From NCBI RefSeq assembly GCF_964213995.1, contig NC_135817.1:53196001-53260000 (forward strand): a stretch of 64,000 nucleotides of DNA. Direction: 5' to 3'. This DNA is from Mustelus asterias. Lineage: Eukaryota. This document shows, in pieces, positions 15,250-61,424 of this stretch. The notes beneath the pieces were generated by a model. The model was not told the DNA's origin. It worked only from the letters and a program-made list of their open reading frames with translations, and did no database searches. Both the position numbers and the translations under genes were made by a program. Position 1 is the first letter of the stretch, and the number at the start of each line of letters is the position of its first letter.

Positions 15250-15660
15250 AAAGCAATTTGCAAACTGTCAAAACTGAGAAGAGTATTACAGTGCTCGAGG
15301 ACAAACCGATTCAGCTGGAATGCAAGATCAGCAATCGGACCAAGCTGGATTCCCAACTGTCGGTGGTTTGGTATGCCCAGGGAACTCTGGAGCAAGTCAG
15401 ACATCCCATTCTCAGCCTGAATCGCAATTCTGTTTTTGAGTATGGCAGCTCAGAGAATAACAGTGCAAGCTTGAGGGATAGGCTGCAGTTTGAAAAAATG
15501 ACCAACGAACTCTACAGTCTGATACTGCAGCAAGCAACTCCAGCTGACACTGGCACTTACTTCTGTTATGTGGAAGAATGGCTCCTTGACCCAAATGACG
15601 TATGGTATAAACTGGGAGAGGATCAGTCTGGACTGACTACTGTCACTGTGCAACAACCAG
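15250..15660 (+). CDS. IGSF3: IGSF3 internal exon, Ig V-type domain (phase 1-1)
   Basis: Acceptor tttgtacccacag|AA and donor CCAG|gtgcag; 411 nt ESNLQTVKTEKSITVLEDKPIQLECKIS...VVWY...DTGTYFCYVEEWLLDPNDVWYKLGEDQSGLTTVTVQQP. Confidence 0.93.
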
Positions 15661-15825
15661 GTGCAGTATAGCTATTAATTTCAGTTTAGGAGAAATGCTT
15701 TATTGAAGGGTGATTTACAAAAGCTATTCCTGTAATTGGCATCATGAGATCATCTTGTTGGGAATTTTAAGACGTAGCTTAAAGGAATGAGGAATGAAGT
15801 TATACAGAAAATCAGCTGAAATCTG

Positions 15826-16996
15826 GACTGCGATTCTCCCAAAAGTGCTGAAATGGCGGGAAAACTGTTCTAAATCCCGACTGTTTTTGTCACTTCAGCT
15901 TCTCACCCGAATCTCCGCACTCTGTGCACTGGAGAGGTCCCAGTTGTGAATCTCATTAAAAACCCAGGAGGGCGGGGCCATTTGCACCAGAGTCTTGACA
16001 GCTCTGGAACTCTGCACATGCGCAGAGTTGTGATCTGTCCTGATCAGTCAGACTCCCCGTTTGCAGGCCAGCTCGATCACTGGCCAGCCCGGGATTCCCG
16101 CAGTGCTGCCCCTCCAGCCCCTCTCGACGGCCCAATCGTGGCCCCCACAACAATTCCCAGGCCAGCCCTGACCCCTCCCCCGTGCCCCCCCCCCCCCCCC
16201 CCCCCCCGCCATTCTGGAATGCCCCGATGCACAGCCCACCACCCTCCCCCCCCCCCCCCCCCCCCCCGCCCAGCAGGGATGATCCCCCACACCCTGGCAG
16301 ACGCCCCCCCACTGACCCCTCCCCGGGTCAGACCCCCCCGGAGGCAGGTACCCCCGCCCCCCGGCCAGCCCTCCCCAATCGCTGGCCTCCCTCCATCCCA
16401 GACCGATCCTGTCTGCAAAGTGGCAGCGGGACCCCCCCACCCCCACCGATCGCCCCTAGGCCCTGTCCACAATAGGCCATGCCCGTTTGGCACTGCCCAA
16501 TGCCTGGTGGGCAGTGCCAAGGCGCCCCCTGGGCATGGGCACTTTGCCCCTTGGGCAGTGCCAGGAGGCACAGGCTGGCACTGCCAGGGCGCCAATGCTC
16601 AGGAAGCACCACCTCCCTGCCGCCCAACCCCCTGGGGGGTCCCGATTGCCACCCCCTTCATTCCAGCAGGGTCTCCCACTAGTTCCCCAAATGTGGGGAG
16701 CTAGTCTGAACCCCGCCAGAATGAAGTACTCCTGGCGGGGTGGGAGATTCGATCGGGACCTGAAAGGTCCCGATAATGAACTAATAAACGTATTTAATAC
16801 ATTAAAAAAAGATTCAAATGACTTACCTGCCGTCCTGCCGGTTTCCAGCGTGGTCTGACTGCTGACTATTCGCTGGCTCTGGGAGATGCGCATGCATTCC
16901 CGGCGCACGTGCAAATCCCTGTTCAAGGTCGGCAACGTGCATCTCCCACCACAACCTGACAGAAAAATTGCAGTCGCGATGGGAGAATCGTGGCCC
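15826..16996. mobile_element. GC-rich non-autonomous TIR DNA transposon (probably Harbinger-type)
   Basis: Imperfect terminal inverted repeats GGACTGCGATTCTCCC / GGGAGAATCGTGGCCC; internal C-runs and TGGCACTGCC palindromes generate the spurious Pro/Gly-rich ORFs. Confidence 0.65.
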
Positions 16997-17721
16997 TTGT
17001 TTCTGAAATGCAATATCTTCCAGCTGTCTGATGTGTGCTGAGTTAGCATCAGTTTTAAATTACAATGTTGTTTGCATTGCAAATATAGCACAAATGCGTT
17101 GCCTGTTTTGGCACCAAATCCACAGCATAACAATGCAAATATTATCATTGCCATGCTTAAACCGCACATACAACTCCCAAATGAGCTATGTTGTCTAGCC
17201 TCCAAAACTATTGCCAAAATACAGTGCTCATCCTAGTGCCACAGTACGCATCGTACAAAGACCTTCCTCGCTGTGTGAGTTACCCCCACTCCCACATACA
17301 GGTAATGTGGGACTGGTAAGATTTAAGTGTGTGCTCTGGTTTCCTGAAAGCTTGTGAGTGCCACCATTCTGTGCACTTCTGTGTCTCAAAGGAGTTGTTT
17401 CAGTGTCATGGGATTAACACAATCCTGTCAGTTGGAAGATGCGATATTATTAATGTTAAGGTTGAATTTAGCAAGGGCACCAGATTGCCCAGTGAAATTC
17501 AGCACACTCCATTTTACTCACCTGTGACAAAATTCACCTTATTCTGCCTGTTATATTTACAGGAATCTCTCTTTTTGGTATTCCATGTTAAACAAAAGTT
17601 GCTTTTAAAATTCATGTACAACATGCATTGTAAAGTTTAACAGATTCTGTGAGCTCTTCCCGGCCAGTAACTGAACAGTGTTAATCCTGTGAGCAGCGTT
17701 GCCCTGATCAACAATATACGA

Positions 17722-18060
17722 CTTCTCGGCCTTTTGGCTAAGATCAAGTGTAGTATGGATTGGATGCTGCACTTGGTTGAGGTCATTAGGTTACATTGAA
17801 GCTTCATATGTTTCATATGAAGCAATTTTTAAAAGCGGTATCTCGGCCTTTTGGCTAAGATGCAAATGAGATCAAGTCTTGGAGGAGGAATTGCTTTCCC
17901 TCCTCCAATCAGCTTGGCCCATGTAGATCAGGCCCAGGACAGGGTAAATGGTCGCTTGCCCTGTCTTGCCAGCCTGGATCAGAAATGTCTCAACTTGTTG
18001 AGACTCTGAATTGGACTTGATTTGATTGAATTGGAAAAGTATTTAAAAAAGATTTTTTTT
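17722..18060 (+). mobile_element. U2 snRNA-headed SINE-like element with duplicated head
   Basis: 17722-17756 CTTCTCGGCCTTTTGGCTAAGATCAAGTGTAGTAT is identical to vertebrate U2 nt 5-39; second head 17841-17861 (U2 nt 7-27); candidate TSD ATACGAC at 17716-17722 and 18062-18068. Confidence 0.75.
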
Positions 18061-18204
18061 AATACGACACTTTCACAGACCAAAAGCAACGGTGTGTATT
18101 CCTCATGTTTATGCAATGGGGCAGGGGAGGAAAGCATATTTGGTGGTCACAGGGCTGTCCTTAAAGGGCCAGGAATGAGAGCTGATCTCCCATTTAAGAT
18201 ATTT

Positions 18205-19602
18205 AAGGCATCTCCCATTTCAGATAGAAATGAGGAGGATTATTTTCTCTAAGGATTGTTAATCTTTGGAAATCTCTACTCCAGAGATCAATGGAGGTTG
18301 GATCATTTATAGCAGCAAAGTGATGGAAGAGGTCATCAACTGTGCTTTCAAGCATCACTTACTCAGCAATAACCTGACCCCAAATGTTCAGTTTGGGTTC
18401 CGTCAGGGCCACTCAGCTCCTGATCTCATACAGCATTGGTCAAACAGGGACTAAAAAGCTGAATGCCAAAGGTGAGGTGAGGGTGACAGCCCTTGACATC
18501 AAGGCAGCATTTGATCGTGTGTGCATCAAGGAGCCCTAGCAAAACTGGAGTCAATGGGAAGGCGGGGGGGATTCTCTTCAGTGGTTGGAGTCATACTTGG
18601 CCTAAAGGAAAATGGTTGTGGTGATTGGAGGTCAAACATCTCAGCTGCAGGTTTCCTCAGAGTAATGCCCCAGGCCCAACCACTTTCAGCTACTTCATCA
18701 CTGGCCTTCCTTCCATCATAAGGTCAGAAATGGGAATGTTTGCAGATGACTGCACAATGTTCAGCACCATTCGCAACTCCTCAGATACTGAAGCAGTTCA
18801 TGTACAAATTCATAAACTGAATGGGACTAGCCATATAAATAGGAATATTGCAGAGAGTACTCACCTCCTGATCCCCAAAAGCCTGTCCACCATTTACAAG
18901 GCACAAGTCAGGAGTGTGATGGAATACTCTCCACTTGCCTGGATGAGTGCAACTCCAACGACACTCAAGAAGCTCAACATCATCCAGCCTGCTTGATTGC
19001 TACTCCTTCTACAAACATTCACTCCCTCCACCACAGATGAACAGTGGCAGCAATGTGTACCATCTACAAGATGCACTGCAGAAATGCATCAAGATTCCTT
19101 AGATAGCACCTTCCAAACCCATGACCATTCCCATCTAGAAGGACAAGAACAGCAGATACCTGGGAATGCCACCACCTGGAGGTTCCCTTCCAAGTCACCC
19201 ACCATCCTGACTTGGAAAAATATCGCCAGTGTTTCAATGTCACTGGGTCAAAATACTGAAATTACCTCCGTAACAGTACTGTGGTTGTGTACCTATACCT
19301 CAGGGACTGCAGTGGTTCAAGAAGGCAGCTCACCACTATCTTCTGAAGGGTAACTAGGGATGGACTATAAGTGCTGGCCTAGCCAGTGACGCCCACATCC
19401 CATAATGTGAATTTTAAAAATTAAGGCTGAGTCAGAGAGATTTTAATCTACAAGGGAGTCCAGGTTTATAGGGACAGACAGGAATGTGGAGTTAAGGCCA
19501 TGATTAGATTAGCCATGATCAGATCAGCCATGATCTTATTAAATGTCAAAGCAGGCTTGAGAGGCCAAATGGCCAACTCCTGATTCTTGTGTTCTTCTGT
19601 TC
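18205..19602 (+). mobile_element. CR1 3' end (18205-18310 and 19420-19602) interrupted by a second LINE (about 18311-19415, CR1/L2 group, RT remnants)
   Basis: Inner element encodes QFGFRQGHSAPDLI, LDIKAAFDRV, FADDCT and YKAQVRSVMEYSPLAW; the outer CR1 tail resumes at 19420 and ends GGCCAAATGGCC...TTCTTGTGTTC. Confidence 0.8.
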
Positions 19603-21978: not shown

Positions 21979-22430
21979 CTGTATATAAATTAGATTATAG
22001 ATATATAAATGAAAAGACCCATCTGAGTTTCTCAAGTACAATAAATTACACACAGGAGGGTCTGCAGGAACGGTCTGCTTAGAATTAGTCCCTTTCTGCA
22101 TCATTCAATTTTTCCCCCTGTTGGGTTGACCTAGGCAGAGATGTCTGAAAGTGGGCTTGTTCTAGCCCTTGGCTGAGGGAAATAGTGTGAATATAAGAGT
22201 AAATTCATTGATCCTGGCCTCCCAGTAGGATGCAATGCTCAGACGAGTTGTGGACTGGAGATAGGACTGCAACACTCTAACTGTGATTCTCTGAGCTACA
22301 CTGCCTTCCAGTTCTGGGACCCTCAGATAAATGAGTTTCTTTGACGGAGAGACAAATGTGTGTATTCTCAGGTCTTCACAAATTAAAACATTATAACCTG
22401 TTATTTCCTTGTTTTCAATTTCACAAACAG

Positions 22431-22847
22431 AATTTAAAATGCAAGTGGATAAAACTGAACTGAACATCAGCGTACCGGAGAAGGACCTGTTTCAGCTCGG
22501 CTGCAATGTAACCCACCGGACACAAGACAACTCCCAGTTCGCCGTATCCTGGTTCGCATGGAAGGTCAAAGAAGGTGCTGACCAAAGGGAGTCAATTTTA
22601 AAAATTGATCACAATTCAGTGTTTGGGTTCGATGTCTCACTGGATGGCGCTGAGGGAATGAAGGAGAGGCTGCAGTTAGAGAGACCGTCCAATGGATTCT
22701 ACAGTTTGACGGTTCAGAACTCTGCCAGCAGTGACACGGGGTACTACTACTGTCACGTGGAGGAGTGGATTCAAAATGCCAACAATATCTGGTATAAACT
22801 TGGCGAAGATGAGTCTGGGCTGGTCATGATCACAGTACAAGATAGAG
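22431..22847 (+). CDS. IGSF3: IGSF3 internal exon, membrane-proximal Ig V-type domain (phase 1-1)
   Basis: Acceptor tttcacaaacag|AA and donor AGAG|gtaact; 417 nt EFKMQVDKTELNISVPEKDLFQLGCNVT...VSWF...DTGYYYCHVEEWIQNANNIWYKLGEDESGLVMITVQDR, containing an EWI motif. Confidence 0.93.
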
Positions 22848-22962
22848 GTAACTTATTGACAAAATGGTGATCTTTCCTAAATCACATGCCATCACTTAAA
22901 TTAAATAATTAAATAAAATAATTTAAGTGCATTCCCACAGCTTAGCACGTGATGCGTCAGGA

Positions 22963-27299: not shown

Positions 27300-27981
27300 A
27301 AATATGTTTGTGATTTTCCTGGTCAATGTATTTTAATGTGTTTACTTTGTAATAAAATTTATTTTAATGGTGCATGTTTGGATGGGAGAGGAACTGACTT
27401 ACATCATTACAGCTATACATCAGAGAAGTTCTTTTTTGATAGAATATGATTGGACATTTTTGATAAGAACGATGATTAGAGCGATTATTTTGGAGTCTGT
27501 TTAGCCTCCAGTGATGCAGTCCTCGAGTTAAAGCCCTGCCCCTGGACAGACAGGGTAGGGTTATGGGCTCAGGGACTTAAAATTTCACAATCAGGCAACC
27601 TGACCCCATTCTCAGCCTTTAAATGACAAAGTTCCAGAAATTAGTTCATGGCCGAGTCCCCTGCAAAAGGCCAAGGGGCCTAATGAACTTACCGAAAGCA
27701 CAGCCTGCTGACATCAGCAGCGTCGTGACTTCAATGTAATACTATGTGAAAGAGAGACTTGAGATTCTCTGCAGTTGATCCGAGGCTGAAGCTGTCAGCT
27801 TCCTAAATGAAGTGATTCTTTCACATTTCTTGTGGACCAGGAGGAACAGGAGTGCTCAGCCTTGGCTTCTCAAGGAAGCTTTCAGCCTCCCCACAGCTTT
27901 CCAAACCATCAGCATCTCCACTCCCTCCTGATCAATAAGAAGGATAAGGTAAATTTCTTTGGATCCTGTCATTAGAAAAGT

Positions 27982-28071
27982 ACAGTAAGAAGTCTCACAA
28001 CACCAGGTTAAAGTCCAACAGGTTTATTTGGTAGCAAATACCATAAGCTTTCGGAGCGCTGCCCCTTCGTC
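27982..28071 (-). mobile_element. PLE 3'-terminal fragment with truncated hammerhead
   Basis: Revcomp GACGAAGGGGCAGCGCTCCGAAAGCTTATGGTATTTGCTACCAAATAAACCTGTTGGACTTTAACCTGGTGTTGT is nearly identical to 61214-61288. Confidence 0.85.
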
Positions 28072-28080
28072 GAAGGTCAG

Positions 28081-28254
28081 AATGGACTGGGCAAACCCAA
28101 ATCCATTCCTTGCTTGCTCCAAAAAACAAATTCAAAATCCAATTGAATCCAATTCATGGTCCCCACAAGAGACACAAACAAGATTCAGGCTGACAAGATA
28201 AGGCATTGCAGCCCATCTTGATCTTGATCTGACGCTTGATCTTAGCCAAAAAGG
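28081..28254 (-). mobile_element. U2 snRNA-headed element, copy 2
   Basis: Revcomp CCTTTTTGGCTAAGATCAAGCGT (U2 5' end), then ATGGGCTGCAATGCCTTATCTTGTCAGCCTGAATC and GAATTGGATTCAATTGG, homologous to 17960-18034. Confidence 0.7.
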
Positions 28255-28801
28255 TATAGTACTTTATGGTAGAAAAATATTGCACAGCTCTTCACAAAGG
28301 TGTGTAATTTAAGGGTTTAATTTGATGTCACAGTCCTGTTAATACTAATCCAAATAAATCTGCGTTCTAGTGAAATATGACATCAGTACTACAGGAATCA
28401 ATGGTTCCCACTGTTAACTCCCTCTCAGGCATTTTTACAGTAACACAATCAGTACACTCCCTCAACCACCCAGGAAGAGAAGATTTCAAAGTAATTTCTC
28501 TATATGTGTGATAGGTGACCCACAGCCTGGGTGGGAAAGGCCTTGAATGTTAATCAACTGTGCCTCAAGTTATGCATAAGTGTGCAAAATGTACTCAGAC
28601 TAAGCTTGTGAACATGATCTATCCACAAATTCTGGTGAAAAGATTTCTTATAAGCAGACTTACAAAGAAACCTCAGATGCTGAAATAAAACAGAAAATAC
28701 TGAAAATAAGCAGAATGTTCTGTCAGCGTCTGCAAAGAGAATTTTCTGATGTGACAAAAAAGAAAGTAAGTTTCTGATCTTTCGCTATTTCTTTCCTGCA
28801 G

Positions 28802-52899: not shown

Positions 52900-55800
52900 T
52901 TTAAACAATATGTGGATAGGCCGACAAGAGGTGAGGCCACATTGGATTTGGTACTGGGAAATGAACCGGGCCAAGTGTTAGATTTGGTTGTGGGAGAGCA
53001 CTTTGGAGATAGTGACCACAATTCGGTGTCTTTTGTTATTGCAATGGAGAGGGATAGGGCCGTACGGCAGGGCAAGGTTTACAAGTGGGGGAGAGGTAAT
53101 TATGATGCGATTAGGCAAGAATTAGGGGGCATAAGATGGGAACAGAAACTGTCAGGGAAAGGCACTAATGAAAAGTGGAACTTTTTCAAGGAACAAATAC
53201 TGGGTGTCCTTGATAGGTATGTCCCTGTCAGGCAGGGAGGAAATGGCCGAGTGAGGGAAACATGGTTCACGAAAGAGGTGGAATGTCTTGTGAAAAGGAA
53301 GAGGGAAGCTTATGTAGGGATGAGGAAATAAGGTTCAGATGGCTCGATTGAGGGTTACAAGTTAGCAAGGAATGAGCTGAAAAAGGGCCTTAGGAGAGCT
53401 AGTAGGGGACATGAGAAGTCCTTGGCGGGTCGGATCAAGGAAAACCCCAAGGCTTTTTACTCTTATCTGAGGAATAAAAGAATGACCAGGGTGAGGTTAG
53501 GGCCAGTCAAGGACAGTAGTGGGAACTTGTGTATGGAGTCAGTAGAGATAGGTGAGGTGATGAATGAATACTTTTCTTCAGTGTTCACCAAGGAGAGGGG
53601 CCATGTTTTTGAGGAAGAGAAGGTGTTACAGGCTAATAGGCTGGAGGAAATAGATGTTCGGAGGGAGGATGTACTGGCAGTTTTGAATAAACTGAAGGTC
53701 GATAAGTCCCCTGGGCCTGATGAAATATATCCTAGGATTCTTTGGGAGGCAAGGGATGAGATTGCGGAGCCTTTGGCTTTGATCTTTGGGTCCTCACTGT
53801 CCACGGGGATGGTGCCAGAGGACTGGAGAGTGGCGAATGTTGTTCCTCTGTTTAAGAAAGGGAATAGAAATGACCCTGGTAATTATAGACCGGGGGTTAG
53901 TCTTACTTCGGTGGTTGGTAAATTGATGGAAAAGGTCCTTAGGGATGGGATTTACGACCATTTAGAAAGATGCGGATTAATCCGGTAAAGTCAGCACGGA
54001 TTCGTGAAGGGTAAGTCGTGCCTCACAAATTTGATTGAAGTTTTTGAGGAGGTAACTAAGTGTGTTGATGAAGGTAGGGCAGTTGACGTCATATACATGG
54101 ATTTTAGTAAGGCGTTTGATAAGGTCCCCCATGGTCGGCTTATGATGAAAGTAAGGAGGTGTGGGATAGAGGAAAAGTTGGCCGATTGGATAGGTAACTG
54201 GCTATCTGATCGAAGACAGAGGGTGGTGGTGGATGGAAAATTTTCGGACTGGAGGCAGGTTGCTAGCGGAGTGCCACAGGGATCAGTGCTTGGTCCTCTG
54301 CTCTTTGTGATTTTTATTAATGACTTAGAGGAGGGGGCTGAAGGGTGAATCAGTAAATTTGCTGATGACACCAAGATTGGTGGAGTAGTGGATGAGGTGG
54401 AGGGCTGTTGTAGGCTGCAAAGAGACATAGATAGGATGCAAAGCTGGGCTGAAAAATGGCAAATGGAGTTTAACCCTTATAAATGTGAGGTGATTCATTT
54501 TGGTAGGACTAATTTAAATGTGGATTACAGGGTCAAAGGTAGGGTTCTGAAGACTGTGGAGGAACAGAGAGATCTTGGGGTCCATATCCACAGATCTCTA
54601 AAGGTTGCCACTCAAGTGGATAGAGCTGTGAAGAAGGCCTATAGTGTGTTAGCTTTTATTAACAGGGGGTTGGAGTTTAAGAGCCGTGGGGTTATGCAAT
54701 TGTGTGCAGTTCTGGTCACCTCACTATAAGAAGGATGTGGAAGCGCTGGAAAGAGTGCAGAGGAGATTTACCAGGATGCTGCCTGGTTTGGAGGGTAGGT
54801 CTTATGAGGAAAGGTTGCGGGAGCTAGGGCTGTTCTCTCTGGAGCGGAGGAGGCTGAGGGGAGACTTAATAGAGGTTTATAAAATGATGAAGGGGATAGA
54901 TAGAGTGAACGTTCAAAGACTATTTCCTCGGGTGGATGGAGCTATTACAAGGGGGCATAACTATAGGGTTCATGGTGGGAGATATAGAACATAGAACATA
55001 GAACATAGAAAGCCACAGCACAAACAGGCCCTTCGGCCCACAAGTTGCGCCGATCACATCCCCACCTCTAGGCCTATCTATAGCCCTCAATCCCATTAAA
55101 TCCCATGTACTCATCCAGAAGTCTCTTAAAAGACCCCAACGAGTTTGCCTCCACCACCACCGACGTCAGCCGATTCCACTCACCCACCACCCTCTGAGTG
55201 AAAAACTTACCCCTGACATCTCCTTTGTACCTACCCCCCAGCACCTTAAACCTGTGTCCTCTCGTAGCAACCATTTCAGCCCTTGGAAATAGCCTCTGAG
55301 AGTCTACCCTATCCAGACCTCTCAACATCTTGTAAACCTCTATCAGGTCACCTCTCATCCTTCGTCTCTCCAGGGAGAAGAGACCAAGCTCCCTCAACCT
55401 ATCCTCATAAGGCATGCCCCCCAATCCAGGCAACATCCTTGTAAATCTCCTCTGCACCCTTTCAATGGCTTCAACATCTTTCCTGTAATGAGGTGACCAG
55501 AACTGTGCGCAGTACTCCAAGTGGGGTCTAACCAGGGTCCTATAAAGCTGCAGCATTATCTCCCGACTCCTAAACTCAATCCCTCGATTAATGAAGGCTA
55601 GTACGCCGTACGCCTTCTTGACCGCATCCTCCACCTGCGAGGCAGATTTAAGAGTCCTATGGACCCGGACCCCAAGGTCCTTCTGATCCTCTACACTGCT
55701 AAGAATGGTACCCTTCATATTATACTGCTGCTTCATCCCATTGGATCTGCCAAAATGGATCACTACACACTTATCCGGGTTGAAGTCCATCTGCCACTTC

Positions 55801-57473
55801 TCCGCCCAGTCTTGCATTCTATCTATGTCTCGCTGCAACTTCTGACATCCCTCCAAACTATCCACAACACCACCTACCTTGGTGTCGTCAGCAAACTTAC
55901 CAACCCATCCCTCCACTTCCTCATCCAGGTCATTTATGAAAATGACAAACAGCAAGGGTCCCAGAACAGATCCCTGGGGCACTCCACTGGTCACTGACCT
56001 CCATGCAGAGAAAGACCCCTCCACAGCCACTCTCTGCCTTCTGCAGGCAAGCCAGTTCTGGATCCACAAGGCAACAGCCCCTTGGATCCCATGCCCTCTC
56101 ACTTTCTCAAGAAGTCTTGCATGGGGGACCTTATCGAACGCCTTGCTGAAGTCCATATAGACCACATCCACCGCTCTTCCTTCGTCAATGTGTTTGGTCA
56201 CATTTTCAAAGAACTCAACCAGGCTCGTAAGGCACGACCTGCCCTTGACAAAGCCGTGCTGACTACTTTTGATCATACTAAACTTCTCTAGATGATCATA
56301 AATCCTGTCTCTCAGGATCCTCTCCATCAACTTACCAACCACTGAGGTTAGACTCACCGGTCGGTAATTTCCCGGGCTGTCCCTGTTCCCTTTCTTGAAT
56401 ATAAGGACCACATCTGCAATCCTCCAATCCTCCGGAACCTCTCCCGTCTCCATCGACGATGCAAAGATCATCGCCAAAGGCTCCGCAATCTCCTCCCTCG
56501 CCTCCCACAGTAACCTGGGGTACATCCCATCCGGTCCCGGCGACTTACCAACCTTGATGCCATTCAATAGTTCCAACACATCCTCTTTCTTTATGTCCAC
56601 ATGCTCGATCCTTTCTGTCCACCGCAAACCAGCAGTACAACCACCCAGATCCCTTTCCACCGTGAATACCGAGGTAAAGTATTCATTAAGCAGCTCCGCC
56701 ATTTCTAACGGTTCCGCACAAACTTTTCCCCCTTCACCTTTTAAGGGTCCTATGCCTTCACATCTCATCCTTTTACTCTTGACATATTTGTAGAAAGCCT
56801 TGGGATTCTCCTTAATCTTACCCGCCAAGGCCTTCTCATGACCCCTTCTCGCTCTCCTAATTTCCTTCTTAAGCTCCTTCCTACATCCCGTATACTCCTC
56901 TAAATCCTTAACACCTCCTAGCTCTCTGAACCTTCTGTACGCCTCTCTTTTCTTATTCACCAGGTTCATCACAACCTTCGTGCACCACGGTTCCCGTACC
57001 CTACCAACACCCCCCTGTCTCATCGGAACGTTGTCATGCAGAGCTCCAGACAAACATTCCTTGAAAATCCTCCACTTTCCTTCGGTACTTTTCCCCAAGA
57101 ATGCCTCCTTCCAATTTACCCGTCTAATTTCCTCCCTGATGACACTGTATTTCCCTTTACTCCAGAGAAACACTTTCCTAGCCTGCCTGATCCTATCTCT
57201 TTCCAATGCTATCGTGGGTATAGCATTGGAAAATATAGGAAGGATATCAGAGGTAGGTTCTTTACGCAGAGAGTGGTTGGGGTGTGGAATGGACTGCCTG
57301 CAGTGATAGTGGAGTCAGACACTTTAGGAACATTTAAGCGGTTATTGGATAGGCACATGGAGCACACCAGGATGATAGGGAGTGGGATCGCTTGATCTTG
57401 GTTTCAGATAAAGCTCGGCACAACATTGTGGGCCGAAGGGCCTGTTCTGTGCTGTACTGTTCTATGTTCTATG
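52900..57473 (+). mobile_element. 5'-truncated CR1 LINE (host), split by a nested CR1
   Basis: APE C-terminal SDH motif, RT ([26 protein letters not shown]) with stops and a frameshift; sequence resumes at 57233 (YRKDIRGRFFTQRVV) and ends (TTCTATG)n. Confidence 0.93.
54988..57212 (-). mobile_element. Young nested CR1 LINE with an uninterrupted 710-codon RT frame (55074-57206), 5'-truncated, endonuclease absent
   Basis: Intact RT motifs [37 protein letters not shown]; (GAACATA)n tail; TSD ATATAG at 54982-54987 and 57233-57238. Confidence 0.95.
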
Positions 57474-58602: not shown

Positions 58603-58790
58603 TGTTGGAGATGATGTACACAAGAAATTTGTAAAGTAGAGGTAAAGAGGGAGCTACAATAGCCCAAGATGCTTATTGATAATCCAGGAAAATTGGTTCC
58701 TGTCTCATGGCTATGATATACTATAGAGCTCATTCTCAGAGTCATTTAACTTGAGAATACAGTTAATAAATACAACTCAATCAATCAATG

Positions 58791-59960
58791 ACTGTGTCCT
58801 CAGCCCCTTACTATACTCCTTATACAATTATAACTGTGTGGCCAAATTCCCCTCCATTTTCAAGTTTGCTGATGACACCACCGTGGGTCAGAACTCAAAC
58901 AACGGCAAGATGGAGTATAGGAAAGAGATAGAGAATCTGGTGAAATGTGATGACAATAATCTCTCCCTCAATATCAGTAAAACAAAGGAGATTGTCATTA
59001 ACTTCAGGAAGCATAGTGGAGGATATCCCCCTGTTTACATCAATGGGGATGAAGTGGAAATAGTCGAGAGCTTCAAGTTTCCAGGTGTCCAGATCACAAC
59101 AACCTGGCCTGGTCCCTCCACGCTGATGCTATATTTAATAAAATCCACCAACACCTTCTCAAGGGGCTAAGGAAATTCAACATGTCTGCTACGACACTCA
59201 CCAGTTTTTACAGAAGCACCATAGAAAGCATTCTTTCTGGTTGTATCACAGCTTGGTATGGCTCCTGCTCTGACCAAGACTACAAGAAACTACAAAGGGT
59301 CGTGAACAAAGCCCAATCAATCACACAAACCAGCCTCACATCCATTGACACTGTCTACTCTTCCCACTGCCTCAGAAAAGTAGCCAGCATAATTAAGAAC
59401 CCCATTCCATCAGGAAAAAGATACAAAGGTCTGAGGACACGTACCAACCGACTCAAGAACAGCTTCTTCCCTGCTGCTGTCAGACTTTTGAATGCATCGT
59501 TCAGTTGATCTTTCTCTACACCCTAGCTTTGACTATAACACGACATTCTGAACCCTCTCTTTTCCTTCTCTATGCATGGTATGCTTTGTCTATATAGCGC
59601 ATGAAACAATACTTTTCCCTGTATACTAGAATCATAGAAACCCTACAGTGCAGAAGGAGCCATTCAGCCAATCGAGACTGCACCAACCACAATTCCACCC
59701 ACGCACTATCCCCGTAGCCCCACACATTTACCCTAGCTAGGGTCAATTTAGTGTGGCCAATCAACCTAACCCGCACACCCTTGGACTGTGGGAGGAAACT
59801 GGAGTACCCGGAGGAAACCCATGCAGACACGGGGAGAGCGTACAAACTCCACACAGACAGTGACCCAAGCCAGGAATTGAACCCGGGTCTTGGGTGCAGT
59901 GAGGCAGCAGTGCTAAACACCGTGCCAACCTACTAACTCATGTGGCAATAATAAATCAAA
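58791..59960 (+). mobile_element. Rex1/Babar LINE (RT C-terminal half) interrupted by an HE1 V-SINE (59627-59927, minus strand)
   Basis: CVLSPLLYSLY...KFADDTTVG...LSLNISKTKEIVINFRK...FYRSTIESILSGCITAWYG; tail resumes at 59928 TGTGGCAATAATAAATCAAA. Confidence 0.88.
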
Positions 59961-60028
59961 TGCAAAGATCCAAGCTGGACAAGAACAGGCATTACACCTG
60001 AGCCCATGCTTGTTCTTAGCCAGAAGGC
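59961..60028 (-). mobile_element. U2 snRNA-headed element, copy 3 (probable tail at 58763-58790, separated by the Rex insertion)
   Basis: Revcomp GCCTTCTGGCTAAGAACAAG (18/20 to U2) ATGGGCTC...AATGCCTGTTCTTGTCCAGCTTGGATC; beyond the Rex element TTGATTGATTGAGTTGTATTTA resembles the tail of copy 1. Confidence 0.6.
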
Positions 60029-60045
60029 TATTTCTAGTTCTGATG

Positions 60046-61300
60046 TGGAGATGCCGGCGTTGGACTGGGGTGAACACAGTAAGAGTTTTAACAACACCAG
60101 GTTAAAGTCCAATAGGTTTATTTGGTAGCGAATACCATTAGCTTTCGGAGCGCTGCTCCTTCGTCAGAGGGAGTGGAAATGTGCTCTCAAACAGTGCACA
60201 GAGACACAAAATCAAGTTACAGAATACTGATTAGAATGCGAATCCCTACAACCAGCCAGATCTCAAAGATACAGATAATGTGGGTGGAGGAAGCATTAAG
60301 CACAGGTTAAAGAGATGTGTATTGTCTCCAGACAGGACAGCCTGCAAGTCCAGGAGGCAAGCTGTGGGGGTTACTGGTAATGTGACATAAATCCAACATC
60401 CCGGTTTAGGCCATCCTCATGTGTGCGGAACTTGGCTATCAGTTTCTGCTCAGCGACTCTGCGCCGTCGTGTGTCGTGAAGGCCGCCTTGGAGAACGCTC
60501 ACATGAGGACGGCCTAAACCGGGATGTTGGATTTATGTCACATTATCAGTAACCCCCACAGAACAGTGACCACGACACCACACAACCCTGCCACAGCAAC
60601 CTCTGCAAGACGTGCCGGATCATCGACACGGATGCCATCATCTCACGTGAGAACACCATCTACCAGGTACACGGTACCTACTCTTGCAACTCGGCCAACG
60701 TTGTCTACCTGATACGCTGCAGGAAAGGATGTCCCGAGGCATGGTACATTGGGGAAACCATGCAGACGCTACGACAACAGATGAATAATCACCGCTCGAC
60801 AATCACCAGGCAAGACTGTTCTCTTCCTGTGGGGGAGCACTTCAGCGGTCACGGGCATTCAGCCTCTGATCTTCGGGTAAGCATTCTCCAAGGCGGCCTT
60901 TACGACACACGACAGCGCAGAGTCGCTGAGCAGAAACTGATAGCCAAGTTCCGCACACATGAGGATGGCCTAAACCGGGATGTTGGATTTATGTCACGTT
61001 ATCAGTAACACCCACAGCTTGCCTCCTGGACTTGCAGGCTGTCCTGTCTGGAGACAATACACATCTCTTTAACCTGTGCTTAATGCTCCCTCCACCCACA
61101 TTGTCTGTATCTTTAAGATCTGGCTGGTTGTAGGGATTCGCATTCTAATCAGTATTCTGTAACTTGATTTTGTGTCTCTGTGCACTGTTTGAGAGCAGAT
61201 TTCCACTCCATCTGACGAAGGAGCAGCGCTCCGAAAGCTAATGGTATTTGCTACCAAATAAACCTGTTGGACTTTAACCTGGTGTTGTTAAAACTCTTAC
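60046..61300. mobile_element. Penelope-like element insertion with inverted terminal arms and a GIY-YIG endonuclease C-terminus (60562-61008, + strand)
   Basis: Frame 60562-61008: QPCHSNLCKTC...NVVYLIRCRKGCPEAWYIGETMQTLRQQMNNHR...VGEHF...EQKLIAKFRTHEDGLN; arms 60079-60500 and 60880-61300 are inverted; 13-bp TSD TCTAGTTCTGATG at 60033-60045 and 61301-61313. Confidence 0.9.
61208..61244 (+). ncRNA. Minimal PLE-type hammerhead ribozyme (inverted twin at 60135-60171, minus strand)
   Basis: CCAT-CTGACGA-A-GGAGC-AGC-GCTCC-GAAA-GCTA-ATGG: intact CUGANGA and GAAA cores, stem II GGAGC/GCTCC, stem I CCAT/ATGG, palindromic AGCT in place of stem III. Confidence 0.75.
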
Positions 61301-61424
61301 TCTAGTTCTGATGACCAGAGTCCAATTTCTCTCTCTCCGAGTGATCATTGAGTCCAGTCTGTCTATTTCTGTGCTTGTGTCTGACTCTCTAGCTCTCACT
61401 TTGGGCTCTGAGTTGACGACCCCA

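What the first reader, a model, noticed from the sequence alone, without database searches (positions are those of the whole stretch)
17716..18068. A U2-snRNA-headed SINE-like family in an elasmobranch (best copy; dimeric head, chain of hairpins)
Seen: an exact 35-nt match to U2 nt 5-39 including the branch-point recognition sequence GTAGTA, then non-U2 sequence, a second U2 head (17841-17861), and a body folding into successive stems (GCTTCATATG-ttt-CATATGAAGC; TTGGAGGAGG...CCTCCTCCAA; GACAGGGTAA...TTGCCCTGTC; GTCTCAAC-tt-GTTGAGAC). It ends in a TTGA-rich then A/T tail, with a candidate 7-bp TSD (ATACGAC). Two more U2-headed pieces in the window (28081-28254; 59961-60028 plus 58763-58790) share the body motif TGCC..T.CTTG.CAGC.TG.ATC and a TTGA-rich tail, which points to a repeat family rather than isolated U2 pseudogenes. 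Established: snRNA-headed SINEs (SINEU) are described from crocodilians, and U2-targeting LINEs (Keno in the Tx1 clade; Utopia) insert near this part of U2. Inference: a possibly undescribed, independently evolved U2-derived SINE, perhaps born from a U2 gene interrupted at about nt 39.
Basis: partly seen in the sequence, partly recalled or inferred. Interest (0 to 1): 0.88.

Follow-up and report, generated by a model that had tools for sequence, protein, structure and literature searches.

The report
U2-headed short retroposon in a shark
This is a young, well-preserved copy of a short mobile element whose front end was copied from the U2 spliceosomal RNA, a rare kind of element so far described in print only from crocodilians, here apparently present in a shark-like genome.

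Summary
Window 17716-18068 contains a 339-nt non-coding element flanked by a 7-bp direct repeat.

**Structure of the copy**
- It starts with 35 of 35 positions identical to Rfam U2 consensus positions 5-39.
- An 83-nt linker follows, then a second split U2 piece (positions 7-27 and 25-32).
- Next come three more perfect hairpins and an A/T-rich end.
- The RNA fold is far stronger than shuffled controls (z -6.5).

**Other copies**
- An older copy at 28257-28127 (minus strand) shares the non-U2 body (E 5e-5 and 3e-6) behind its own U2-like piece.
- A third copy at 60028-59945 is probable but weak.
- The scan's unchecked notes list 34-35 similar elements elsewhere in this genome, so the scan found this before on other DNA.

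**Reading**
- The best reading is a SINEU-like, LINE-mobilised retroposon family.
- The first U2 piece stops at the nt 38/39 site where Keno and Utopia LINEs enter U2 genes. This hints that master copies sit inside U2 genes, but that is inferred only.

**Limits**
- Genome-wide copy number, partner LINE, expression, and Repbase/Dfam status could not be tested.
- Nine literature searches found no report outside crocodilians.

The parts
17716..17722 (+). 5' copy of the 7-bp direct repeat (candidate target-site duplication). Its last letters can also be read as a degenerate U2 5' end (microhomology).
   Evidence: Read. Chance 0.4% (fixed boundary) to 2.3% (7 allowed boundaries).
17722..17756 (+). 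U2 head 1: 35 of 35 positions identical to Rfam U2 consensus positions 5-39 (stem-loop I and the branch-point recognition hexamer). It ends at the nt 38/39 boundary.
   Evidence: alignment (RF00004, 55.3 bits, E 3.2e-8).
17757..17840 (+). Non-U2 linker with hairpin 1 (17801-17810 / 17814-17823, 10 bp, loop TTT), followed by a T5 run (17826-17830) and an A4 run (17831-17834).
   Evidence: (inverted self-hit). No similar stretch elsewhere in the window. Similarity to the element's own 3' part is only marginal (38 of 1000 shuffles reach the score).
17841..17877 (+). U2 head 2, split in two. 17841-17861 equals model positions 7-27 (21 of 21 against head 1). An 8-nt insert at 17862-17869 creates the octamer ATGCAAAT at 17860-17867. 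Then 17870-17877 repeats model positions 25-32.
   Evidence: (exact 21-nt repeat). The octamer occurs 6 times on both strands in the 64 kb.
17879..17908 (+). Hairpin 2 (10-bp perfect stem, 10-nt loop). It lies in a 44-48-nt stretch that copies 2 and 3 lack.
   Evidence: and the three-way alignment. Rfam's full hit aligns it to U2 stem-loop IV, but the body alone gives no U2 match at E<=10.
17938..17980 (+). Hairpin 3 (17938-17947 / 17956-17965), overlapping the conserved family core (17956-17980) that all three in-window copies share.
   Evidence: alignment; fold.
17987..18004 (+). Hairpin 4 (8-bp perfect stem, loop TT). A shorter 5-bp version is present in copy 2.
   Evidence: The copy 2 pairing is read by eye.
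18007..18035 (+). TTGA-rich stretch, shared with copy 2. In the predicted fold it pairs back to 17868-17880 and closes a multi-branch structure.
18036..18061 (+). A/T-rich 3' end (A4, A6, then T8). It is not a clean poly(A) tail.
18062..18068 (+). 3' copy of the 7-bp direct repeat.
28127..28257 (-). Copy 2: an older family member with a single degenerate U2-like head (about 28257-28232) followed by the body and TTGA-rich part. The 3' end is undefined (somewhere in 28072-28127) and no TSD was found.
   Evidence: head 19 of 20, E 0.006; body 72% over 78 nt, E 4.6e-4; E 5.4e-5 and 2.6e-6. Rfam U2 gives only 18.8 bits, E 0.19. Fold z -2.39. No TSD.
59945..60028 (-). Copy 3: a probable, short, degenerate family member (U2-like 20-mer plus the conserved core), cut off by later insertions.
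   Evidence: 18 of 20, E 0.069; E 0.36 and 0.56, each the best non-family hit of its search; 65-66% identity over 71-76 aligned columns. No abutting TSD.

Best explanation
Window 17723-18061 is one young, essentially intact copy of a dispersed, non-coding, non-autonomous retroposon family whose RNA begins with the 5' end of U2 snRNA. It is a SINEU-like element in a shark-like genome.

**Shown**
- The copy has the architecture U2(5-39) - 83-nt linker - U2(7-27, 8-nt insert, 25-32) - three hairpins around a conserved core - TTGA-rich stretch - A/T-rich end.
- The whole unit lies between 7-bp direct repeats.
- Older, simpler relatives with one U2 piece and the same core lie elsewhere in the window.

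**Inferred**
- It spread through an RNA copy that a LINE's reverse transcriptase inserted by target-primed reverse transcription, which made the short duplication.
- The younger subfamily arose when a second U2 5' fragment plus linker was added in front of an older element. Its stems were also lengthened to perfect hairpins.
- It is not a polymerase III SINE. U2 has no internal promoter, and T4-T5 runs lie inside the element.

**Most likely source of transcripts (about 0.3 on its own)**
One or a few master copies sit inside U2 genes at the nt 38/39 site used by Keno and Utopia LINEs. The U2 gene's external promoter starts the RNA at U2 +1 and reads into the element. This would explain why head 1 is exactly the U2 fragment left upstream of such an insertion. 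It also points to a Keno-like Tx1 LINE as the partner.
For: - **U2 head.** 35 of 35 positions match Rfam U2 positions 5-39, in a hit above the gathering score.
- **Second head.** It repeats 21 nt of the first exactly.
- **Flanking repeat.** The 7-bp repeat abuts both ends and is expected by chance in 0.4-2.3% of places.
- **No coding capacity.** The longest ORF lying within the element is 52 aa.
- **Family.** Copy 1's body without U2 letters finds copy 2 at E 5.4e-5, and the reverse search gives 2.6e-6. Both sit behind a U2-like piece in the same order. All 4 of 4 U2-like pieces in the window are followed by family body.
- **Youth.** There are 0 differences in 64 U2-derived positions (35 against the Rfam consensus; 21 + 8 against head 1). 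There are also 38 stem pairs without a mismatch. By my arithmetic this bounds divergence at about 4.6% or less.
- **Structure.** z -6.54 (0 of 100 shuffles) for 17760-18061, and z -4.99 (0 of 200) for 17866-18061.
- **Not Pol III.** A T5 run at 17826-17830 and a T4 run at 17849-17852. No tRNA, 7SL or 5S match in the element.
- **Print.** SINEU families show the same short U2 heads, recurrent 5' addition of U2 pieces, internal oligo-T and an unknown promoter (PMC4494074, Results and Discussion read). Utopia and Keno leave U2 nt 1-38 upstream of their insertion (PMC4640811, section 6 read).
- **Leads only, unchecked.** 35 and 34 first-reader notes describe U2-headed retroposons of 322-369 nt in the same genome. 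Some are described as poly(A)-tailed, TSD-flanked, or carrying a second U2 stem-loop fused to an octamer.
Against: - Family status therefore rests on 2 firm copies and 1 weak copy in 64 kb, plus unchecked notes.
- No copy in the window has a clean poly(A) tail. Copy 1 ends in A6-G-A-T8-A.
- Copies 2 and 3 show no TSD.
- No partner LINE was found. The only LINE end read in the window, a CR1, has a different tail, and nothing else in the window resembles the linker or body.
- No RNA evidence: 0 of the 22 listed runs is on record as RNA.
- The insertion site of copy 1 is not U2-like, and its 3' flank is not U2. This copy is therefore not itself in a U2 gene.
- The heads of the older copies appear to stop near U2 position 31-34 by Rfam's alignment, not at 38. 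The Keno-site argument therefore holds firmly only for head 1.
- External scans for the body found nothing. Those collections are not expected to hold shark genomes.
Confidence: 0.65

Rival explanations
1. Non-autonomous LINE rather than SINE. The element is an internally deleted derivative of a U2-gene-targeting LINE (Keno of the Tx1 clade, or Utopia). It carries the upstream U2 nt 1-38 fragment because it was co-transcribed with its target. The linker would be the LINE's 5' end and the 3' part its 3' UTR. This overlaps with the transcription part of the best explanation but differs in classification and origin.
For: - Head 1 ends at model position 38/39, the site given for Utopia and Keno (PMC4640811, section 6).
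- Some Tx1 families carry U1 or U2 heads at their 5' ends (PMC4494074, Results part 2).
- Unchecked notes mention tandem stacking at one site.
Against: - The flanks of copy 1 are not U2-like.
- No Tx1, Keno or Utopia coding sequence was seen in the window. Of 27 ORFs of 120 aa or more, 2 hit RVT_1: a CR1 and a short fragment.
- The linker and body match nothing else in the window.
- Older copies lack the linker altogether.
Confidence: 0.25
2. Independent chimeric retrocopies. Each locus arose separately when a LINE reverse transcriptase switched template from a LINE or other RNA onto U2 snRNA, so there is no self-propagating master element.
For: - Template switching onto snRNAs is documented for L1. 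Kojima also invokes it for the 5' additions in SINEU (PMC4494074, Discussion read).
- Only three in-window copies were examined.
Against: - A switch onto the 3' end of U2 should add the 3' part or all of U2, not the first 39 nt only.
- Copies 1 and 2 share the order head-core-TTGA stretch.
- No headless copy of the body is in the window.
- The same dimeric form is described in unchecked notes at other loci.
Confidence: 0.1
3. A functional structured RNA gene family, either a U2-variant or a U2-mimicking non-coding RNA, kept by selection rather than a selfish retroposon.
For: - The fold is very strong (z -6.5 and -5.0), with perfect stems.
- The U2 branch-point recognition and U6-pairing region is intact.
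- There is an octamer motif inside the element.
- The Rfam score is above the U2 gathering threshold.
Against: - The Rfam alignment leaves out the middle of U2, including where the Sm site lies. The body alone matches no Rfam family at E<=0.3.
- The flanking 7-bp repeat and A/T end indicate insertion.
- Older copies are decayed to 63-66% identity with a much weaker fold (z -2.4).
- No expression data are available.
Confidence: 0.05

Closest known systems
SINEU-1 of crocodilians (Kojima 2015, PMC4494074)
   Same: - A short U2-derived 5' head on a non-U2 body of unknown origin.
- Younger subfamilies made by adding a further U2 (or U1) piece at the 5' end.
- Oligo-T runs inside and no recognisable promoter.
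- Length under 500 bp, with occasional TSDs of about 10 bp.
   Different: - The host is shark-like, not crocodilian.
- Sequence relatedness of the bodies is untested.
- SINEU has a poly(A) tail, whereas this copy ends in a mixed A/T stretch.
- A chain of perfect hairpins is not described for SINEU in the text I read.
- A Tx1-Mar partner and a Mariner-N4 target preference are shown for SINEU but unknown here.
SINEU-3 of crocodilians (same paper)
   Same: It is built from U2 pieces with an internal deletion, and its first piece is the 5' 32 bp of U2. Head 2 here also ends at U2 position 32.
   Different: SINEU-3 keeps 83 bp of the middle of U2. Here the body alone shows no significant U2 similarity.
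Keno (Tx1 clade) and Utopia, the U2-gene-targeting LINEs (PMC4640811)
   Same: Their insertion point leaves U2 nt 1-38 upstream, exactly where head 1 stops. Tandem insertions occur in both.
   Different: They are autonomous and protein-coding, and they sit in U2 genes. This element is 339 nt, non-coding, and at a non-U2 site.
snRNA retropseudogenes and snRNA-LINE chimeras of mammals (as summarised in PMC4494074, Discussion)
   Same: An snRNA-derived sequence is joined to other sequence, moved by LINE machinery, and flanked by TSDs.
   Different: Those are one-off copies with varied junctions. They usually hold the full or 3'-truncated snRNA joined at its 3' end. Here the same non-U2 body recurs behind the head.

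Membership tests
SINEU (SINEs with snRNA-derived heads) | 5' region derived from U1 or U2 snRNA | tested here: met
   35 of 35 positions match Rfam U2 positions 5-39, and a second piece matches 21 of 21.
SINEU (SINEs with snRNA-derived heads) | Short (under 500 bp), non-coding, non-autonomous | tested here: met
   339 nt between the direct repeats. The longest ORF lying within the element is 52 aa.
SINEU (SINEs with snRNA-derived heads) | Many dispersed copies with the same structure (a transposition unit, not separate chimeras) | tested here: inconclusive
   There are 2 firm copies and 1 weak copy in the 64 kb. A genome-wide test was not possible. The 34-35 notes are unchecked.
SINEU (SINEs with snRNA-derived heads) | 3' poly(A) tail | tested here: inconclusive
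   The end is A4...A6-G-A-T8-A. Copies 2 and 3 have no A tail. Notes on other loci describe A tails, but these are unchecked.
SINEU (SINEs with snRNA-derived heads) | Target-site duplication from LINE-type insertion | tested here: met
   A 7-bp repeat abuts both ends of copy 1, with chance 0.4-2.3%. None was found for the old copies 2 and 3.
SINEU (SINEs with snRNA-derived heads) | Mobilised by Tx1-clade LINEs with a shared target preference | not testable with these tools
   No Tx1 sequence was available, and only one dated insertion site could be examined.
SINEU (SINEs with snRNA-derived heads) | Sequence homology of the body to crocodilian SINEU-1, -2 or -3 | not tested
Polymerase III SINEs (tRNA, 7SL or 5S heads) | Head with an internal pol III promoter derived from tRNA, 7SL or 5S RNA | tested here: not met
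   There is no such Rfam or ARAGORN match in the element. T5 and T4 runs lie inside it.
Genuine U2 snRNA gene | Full-length U2 with its middle part and 3' stem-loops | tested here: not met
   The Rfam alignment skips the model's middle blocks. The body alone gives no U2 match at E<=10.
Keno/Utopia-type insertion in a U2 gene | U2 nt 1-38 upstream and U2 nt 39 onward downstream of the element | tested here: not met
   The upstream part fits, since head 1 ends at 38/39. The 3' flank from 18069 is not U2, and the window has only one U2 hit. This copy is therefore at most a descendant of such an insertion.

The most novel reading that the evidence does not exclude
Sharks hold an independently born family of snRNA-headed retroposons. 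Its newest subfamily carries exactly the U2 nt 1-38/39 fragment that lies upstream of a Keno/Utopia insertion. The master copies therefore live inside U2 genes, borrow the external U2 promoter (RNA polymerase II, snRNA type), and are moved by a U2-targeting Tx1 LINE that has lost strict targeting. If so, this family would give the first concrete answer to how promoter-less snRNA-headed SINEs are transcribed, a question left open for SINEU.
Probability: 0.28. Interest if true: 0.75.

Novelty: new member of a known kind. Interest (0 to 1): 0.6.

Why it matters
**Second origin.** SINEs with snRNA heads are the rarest head class and are reported in print only from crocodilians. PMC4494074 says so in 2015, and a 2025 paper (PMC12054243, passage seen) still says so. 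A second, apparently young family in a cartilaginous fish would show that this design arises repeatedly.

**Transcription.** An intact, recently active family could be used to test how such elements are transcribed without an internal promoter, and which LINE moves them.

**Annotation.** Rfam and Infernal pipelines score this element above the U2 gathering threshold. Copies will therefore be mis-annotated as U2 genes or pseudogenes in shark genomes.

**Possible effect on splicing.** The copies carry an intact branch-point recognition sequence, so abundant transcripts could in principle interact with the splicing machinery. This is untested.

Tried and rejected
**Led nowhere**
As a result there is no depth-based copy number, no empty-site test in the related organisms, and no RNA evidence.
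3. Spurious-ORF trick. The 47-aa reading frame of the body gave no candidate in the search for homologous proteins. It gave 0 hits among 1.84 billion representatives.
4. Pattern scans for the body core found 0 in metagenome contigs, 0 in genome contigs and 0 in viral contigs. These collections are not expected to hold shark genomes, so the blanks say little.
5. The search of earlier findings by sequence was blank.
7. The sigma-70 promoter and terminator scan upstream is a bacterial model and is irrelevant here. I disregard it.

**Considered and rejected or left open**
- A U2 3'-domain origin for hairpin 2. Rfam's full alignment suggests it, but the body alone gives no U2 hit.
- The linker as a decayed copy of the element's own 3' part. 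This is marginal: 38 of 1000 shuffles reach the score.
- A CR1 partner. The CR1 tail in the window is a different 7-nt repeat.
- A Penelope hammerhead tail for copy 2 (note s1-890427). There was no hammerhead at E<=1 in 27800-28500 or 60030-61400, and copy 1 has no similarity to that repeat.
- A pol III SINE (see the membership test).
- A PSE-type promoter upstream of copy 1. This was not tested, because I hold no tool-given consensus and did not type one from memory.

**Papers and supplements**
- The supplements of PMC4494074 and PMC4640811 (junction alignments) were closed. They may bear on the exact Keno/Utopia 5' junctions and on SINEU sequences.
- PMC4494074: outline, both parts of Results, Discussion and found passages.
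- PMC4640811: found passages and section 6.
- PMC5381603, PMC5753468, PMC5786205, PMC7245038 and PMC12054243: found passages only.
- All other papers: search listings only.
Full report
**What is there**

Reading 17500-18300 and scanning the window with Rfam at gathering thresholds confirm the core observation. There is one U2 hit: RF00004, 17718-17921 +, 55.3 bits against a gathering score of 46, E 3.2e-8. In its alignment, window 17722-17756 matches model positions 5-39 at 35 of 35 positions. After that the alignment breaks down.

A local blastn of 17700-18080 against the window shows an exact 21-nt internal repeat, 17724-17744 = 17841-17861. By offset this is U2 positions 7-27. Read, the second piece is followed by an 8-nt insert (17862-17869) and then by 17870-17877, which repeats U2 positions 25-32.

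The insert creates the octamer ATGCAAAT at 17860-17867. That motif occurs 6 times on both strands in the 64 kb, so its presence is a weak signal. It was noticed after an unchecked note on another locus mentioned an octamer.

**Structure**

- Folding 17760-18061 as RNA gives -109.4 kcal/mol against -79.9 +/- 4.5 for 100 shuffles, z -6.54, with none as good.
- The part after the second head (17866-18061) gives z -4.99, with 0 of 200 shuffles as good.
- In that fold the U2-derived letters at about 17868-17880 pair with the TTGA-rich stretch near 18013-18028. This closes a multi-branch structure around hairpins 2-4.
- The TTGA-rich stretch may therefore be a structural partner of the head rather than a LINE-type microsatellite tail.

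**Ends**

The 7-bp motif ATACGAC abuts both ends, at 17716-17722 and 18062-18068.
- At random places in the window, an equal repeat is found in 784 of 194,935 trials (0.4%) with a fixed 5' boundary.
- With seven allowed boundaries, it is found in 4,535 of 195,007 trials (2.3%).
- The 5' copy can also be read as a degenerate U2 5' end, as expected if a full-length U2 +1 end joined the target by microhomology. This is an inference.
- The 3' end is A/T-rich (A4, A6, then T8) and is not a clean poly(A) tail.
- The longest ORF lying within the element is 52 aa.

**Family**

- Copy 1 to copy 2. Copy 1's body without any U2 letters (17866-18061) was searched with nhmmer against both strands of the window. 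It finds 28231-28136 (minus) at E 5.4e-5. The other three non-self rows are its own hairpins and one hit at E 2.9.
- Copy 2 to the others. The reverse search from copy 2 finds copy 1 at E 2.6e-6 and 60017-59965 at only E 0.36.
- Copy 3. Searched alone, it finds copy 2 at E 0.56.
- Heads. Both other loci begin with a U2-like 20-mer in the right orientation, matching 19 of 20 (E 0.006) and 18 of 20 (E 0.069).
- Verdict on copies. Copy 2 is therefore a firm relative and copy 3 a probable one. The proposed continuation of copy 3 at 58763-58790 is not supported.
- Heads and bodies. All 4 of 4 U2-like pieces that one search found in the window are followed by family sequence.
- Alignment. A three-way alignment gives 63-66% pairwise identity. 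It shows that copies 2 and 3 lack the linker, the first head, and a 44-48-nt stretch holding hairpin 2. In copy 2, hairpins 3 and 4 are partial or shorter.
- Older copies. Copy 2 folds much less strongly: z -2.39, with 7 of 200 shuffles as good. No TSD was found for copies 2 and 3.
- Overall. The picture is an old, simple subfamily and a young, elaborated one.

**Age of copy 1**

There are 0 differences in 64 U2-derived positions. Of these, 35 are compared with the Rfam consensus, and 21 + 8 with head 1. There are also 38 stem pairs without a mismatch. By my arithmetic ((1-d)^64 >= 0.05), divergence is bounded at about 4.6% or less.

**Beyond the window**

The scan's own notes are all first-reader notes and none has been followed up.
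- 35 notes match 'U2 snRNA SINE' and 34 match 'U2 retroposon', in the same genome, among 816 windows with notes.
- Listed lengths of 322-369 nt fit the 339-353 nt seen here.
- Some notes describe poly(A) tails, TSDs, tandem stacking, tRNA genes nearby, and a second U2 stem-loop fused to an octamer.
- These are leads, not evidence. Several notes may describe the same locus.

I could not test them:
- Pattern scans of the metagenome, prokaryote-genome and viral collections found nothing.
- Two protein-space searches with the body's reading frame found nothing.

One search lists 22 runs from 10 studies that hold part of 16500-19500. Two hold half of the words or more, and none is on record as RNA. 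Several different organisms hold an equal small share (0.15-0.19). That share might be a shared repeat, but it was not tested.

**What it is and how it most likely works**

The element has the defining anatomy of SINEU (Kojima 2015, PMC4494074; Results and Discussion read). That anatomy is:
- a short U2-derived head on a non-U2 body
- younger forms made by adding further U2 pieces at the 5' end
- oligo-T inside and no known promoter
- short length and occasional TSDs

I therefore read copy 1 as a LINE-mobilised retrocopy of such a family (confidence 0.65). Pol III transcription is unlikely. U2 has no internal promoter (PMC4494074, Introduction passage), T5 and T4 runs lie inside the element, and there is no tRNA, 7SL or 5S similarity.

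One observation bears on origin. Head 1 stops at U2 position 38/39. Section 6 of PMC4640811 states that U2 downstream of Utopia insertions starts at nt 39, so that nt 1-38 is the expected upstream fragment. It also states that Keno has the identical 3' flank.

A master copy sitting at that site of a U2 gene would be transcribed from U2 +1 by the gene's external promoter and would carry exactly this head. This is inferred (about 0.3). Against it:
- Copy 1's own flanks are not U2.
- No Tx1, Keno or Utopia sequence is in the window. Only 2 of 27 ORFs of 120 aa or more hit RVT_1, a CR1 and a fragment.
- The older heads seem to stop near position 31-34.
- 5' junctions of such LINEs vary between families (PMC4640811, section 6).

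**Rivals**

- A non-autonomous Keno/Utopia derivative (0.25, overlapping the best explanation).
- Independent template-switch chimeras (0.1). These are disfavoured because only the first 39 nt of U2 are present, and because the body recurs in the same order with no headless copies in the window.
- A selected structured RNA gene (0.05). This is disfavoured by the insertion signature and the decay of the older copies.

**Known or new**

Nine literature searches found no report of snRNA-headed SINEs outside crocodilians.
- PMC4494074 states that none were detected elsewhere.
- A 2025 paper still cites them as crocodilian (PMC12054243, passage).

Repbase, Dfam and the papers' supplements could not be consulted, so an uncurated library entry cannot be excluded. 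I rate the element as a new member of a known kind.

**Host**

The window's CR1 reverse transcriptase (55074-57206, minus strand; RVT_1 E 5e-34) has named relatives as follows:
- Scyliorhinus torazame at 62% identity, and a cluster with Leucoraja erinacea proteins at 61%.
- Birds and turtles at 41-55%.
- An unnamed hit at 88%.

This fits a chondrichthyan host but does not name the species.

Noticed in passing
window 7027-7521, 15258-15671, 22409-22870 (+): Three ORFs with immunoglobulin V-set domains (PF07686; E 3e-9, 1e-11 and 8.5e-9). This looks like a cluster of V-set exons or genes on the plus strand, and the U2-headed copy 1 lies between two of them. A homologue search with one of them found nothing within the length limits.
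   Followed up: partly
window 55000-57206 (-): A CR1-type LINE with a 710-aa RT ORF (RVT_1, E 5e-34). Its 3' end near 55000 carries a short 7-nt tandem repeat. The closest named relatives are in catshark and skate.
   Followed up: partly
window 60099-60523 and 60877-61301; also 27982-28071: A 425-bp inverted duplication at 96.7% identity. One end shares a repeat of about 90 nt with 27982-28071, right behind copy 2. Another copy lies right in front of copy 3. First-reader notes call this a Penelope hammerhead repeat, but Rfam found no hammerhead at E<=1 in 27800-28500 or 60030-61400.
   Followed up: partly
window 1427-1501 (-): A tRNA-Val(CAC) gene (Rfam 46.6 bits; ARAGORN). Unchecked notes on other windows report U2-headed elements next to tRNA genes. 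Here the nearest family copy is 16 kb away.
   Followed up: no
window 11853-12221 (+): An ORF with a short ALKBH8_N-like match (PF09004, E 5e-7) inside a stretch repeated in the window. It is probably part of a transposable element.
   Followed up: no
window 58751-59500 (+) and 59600-59935 (-): A 5'-truncated LINE fragment (RVT_1, E 8e-5, below Pfam's cut-off) lies inside or next to copy 3. Next to it is a repeat with about 11 further hits in the window, which by eye looks like a tRNA-derived SINE. This explains why copy 3 is cut short.
   Followed up: no
window 16500-19500: Runs from several different coded organisms each hold an equal small share (0.15-0.19) of this stretch's sampled words. 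That would fit a shared repeat rather than graded orthology.
   Followed up: no
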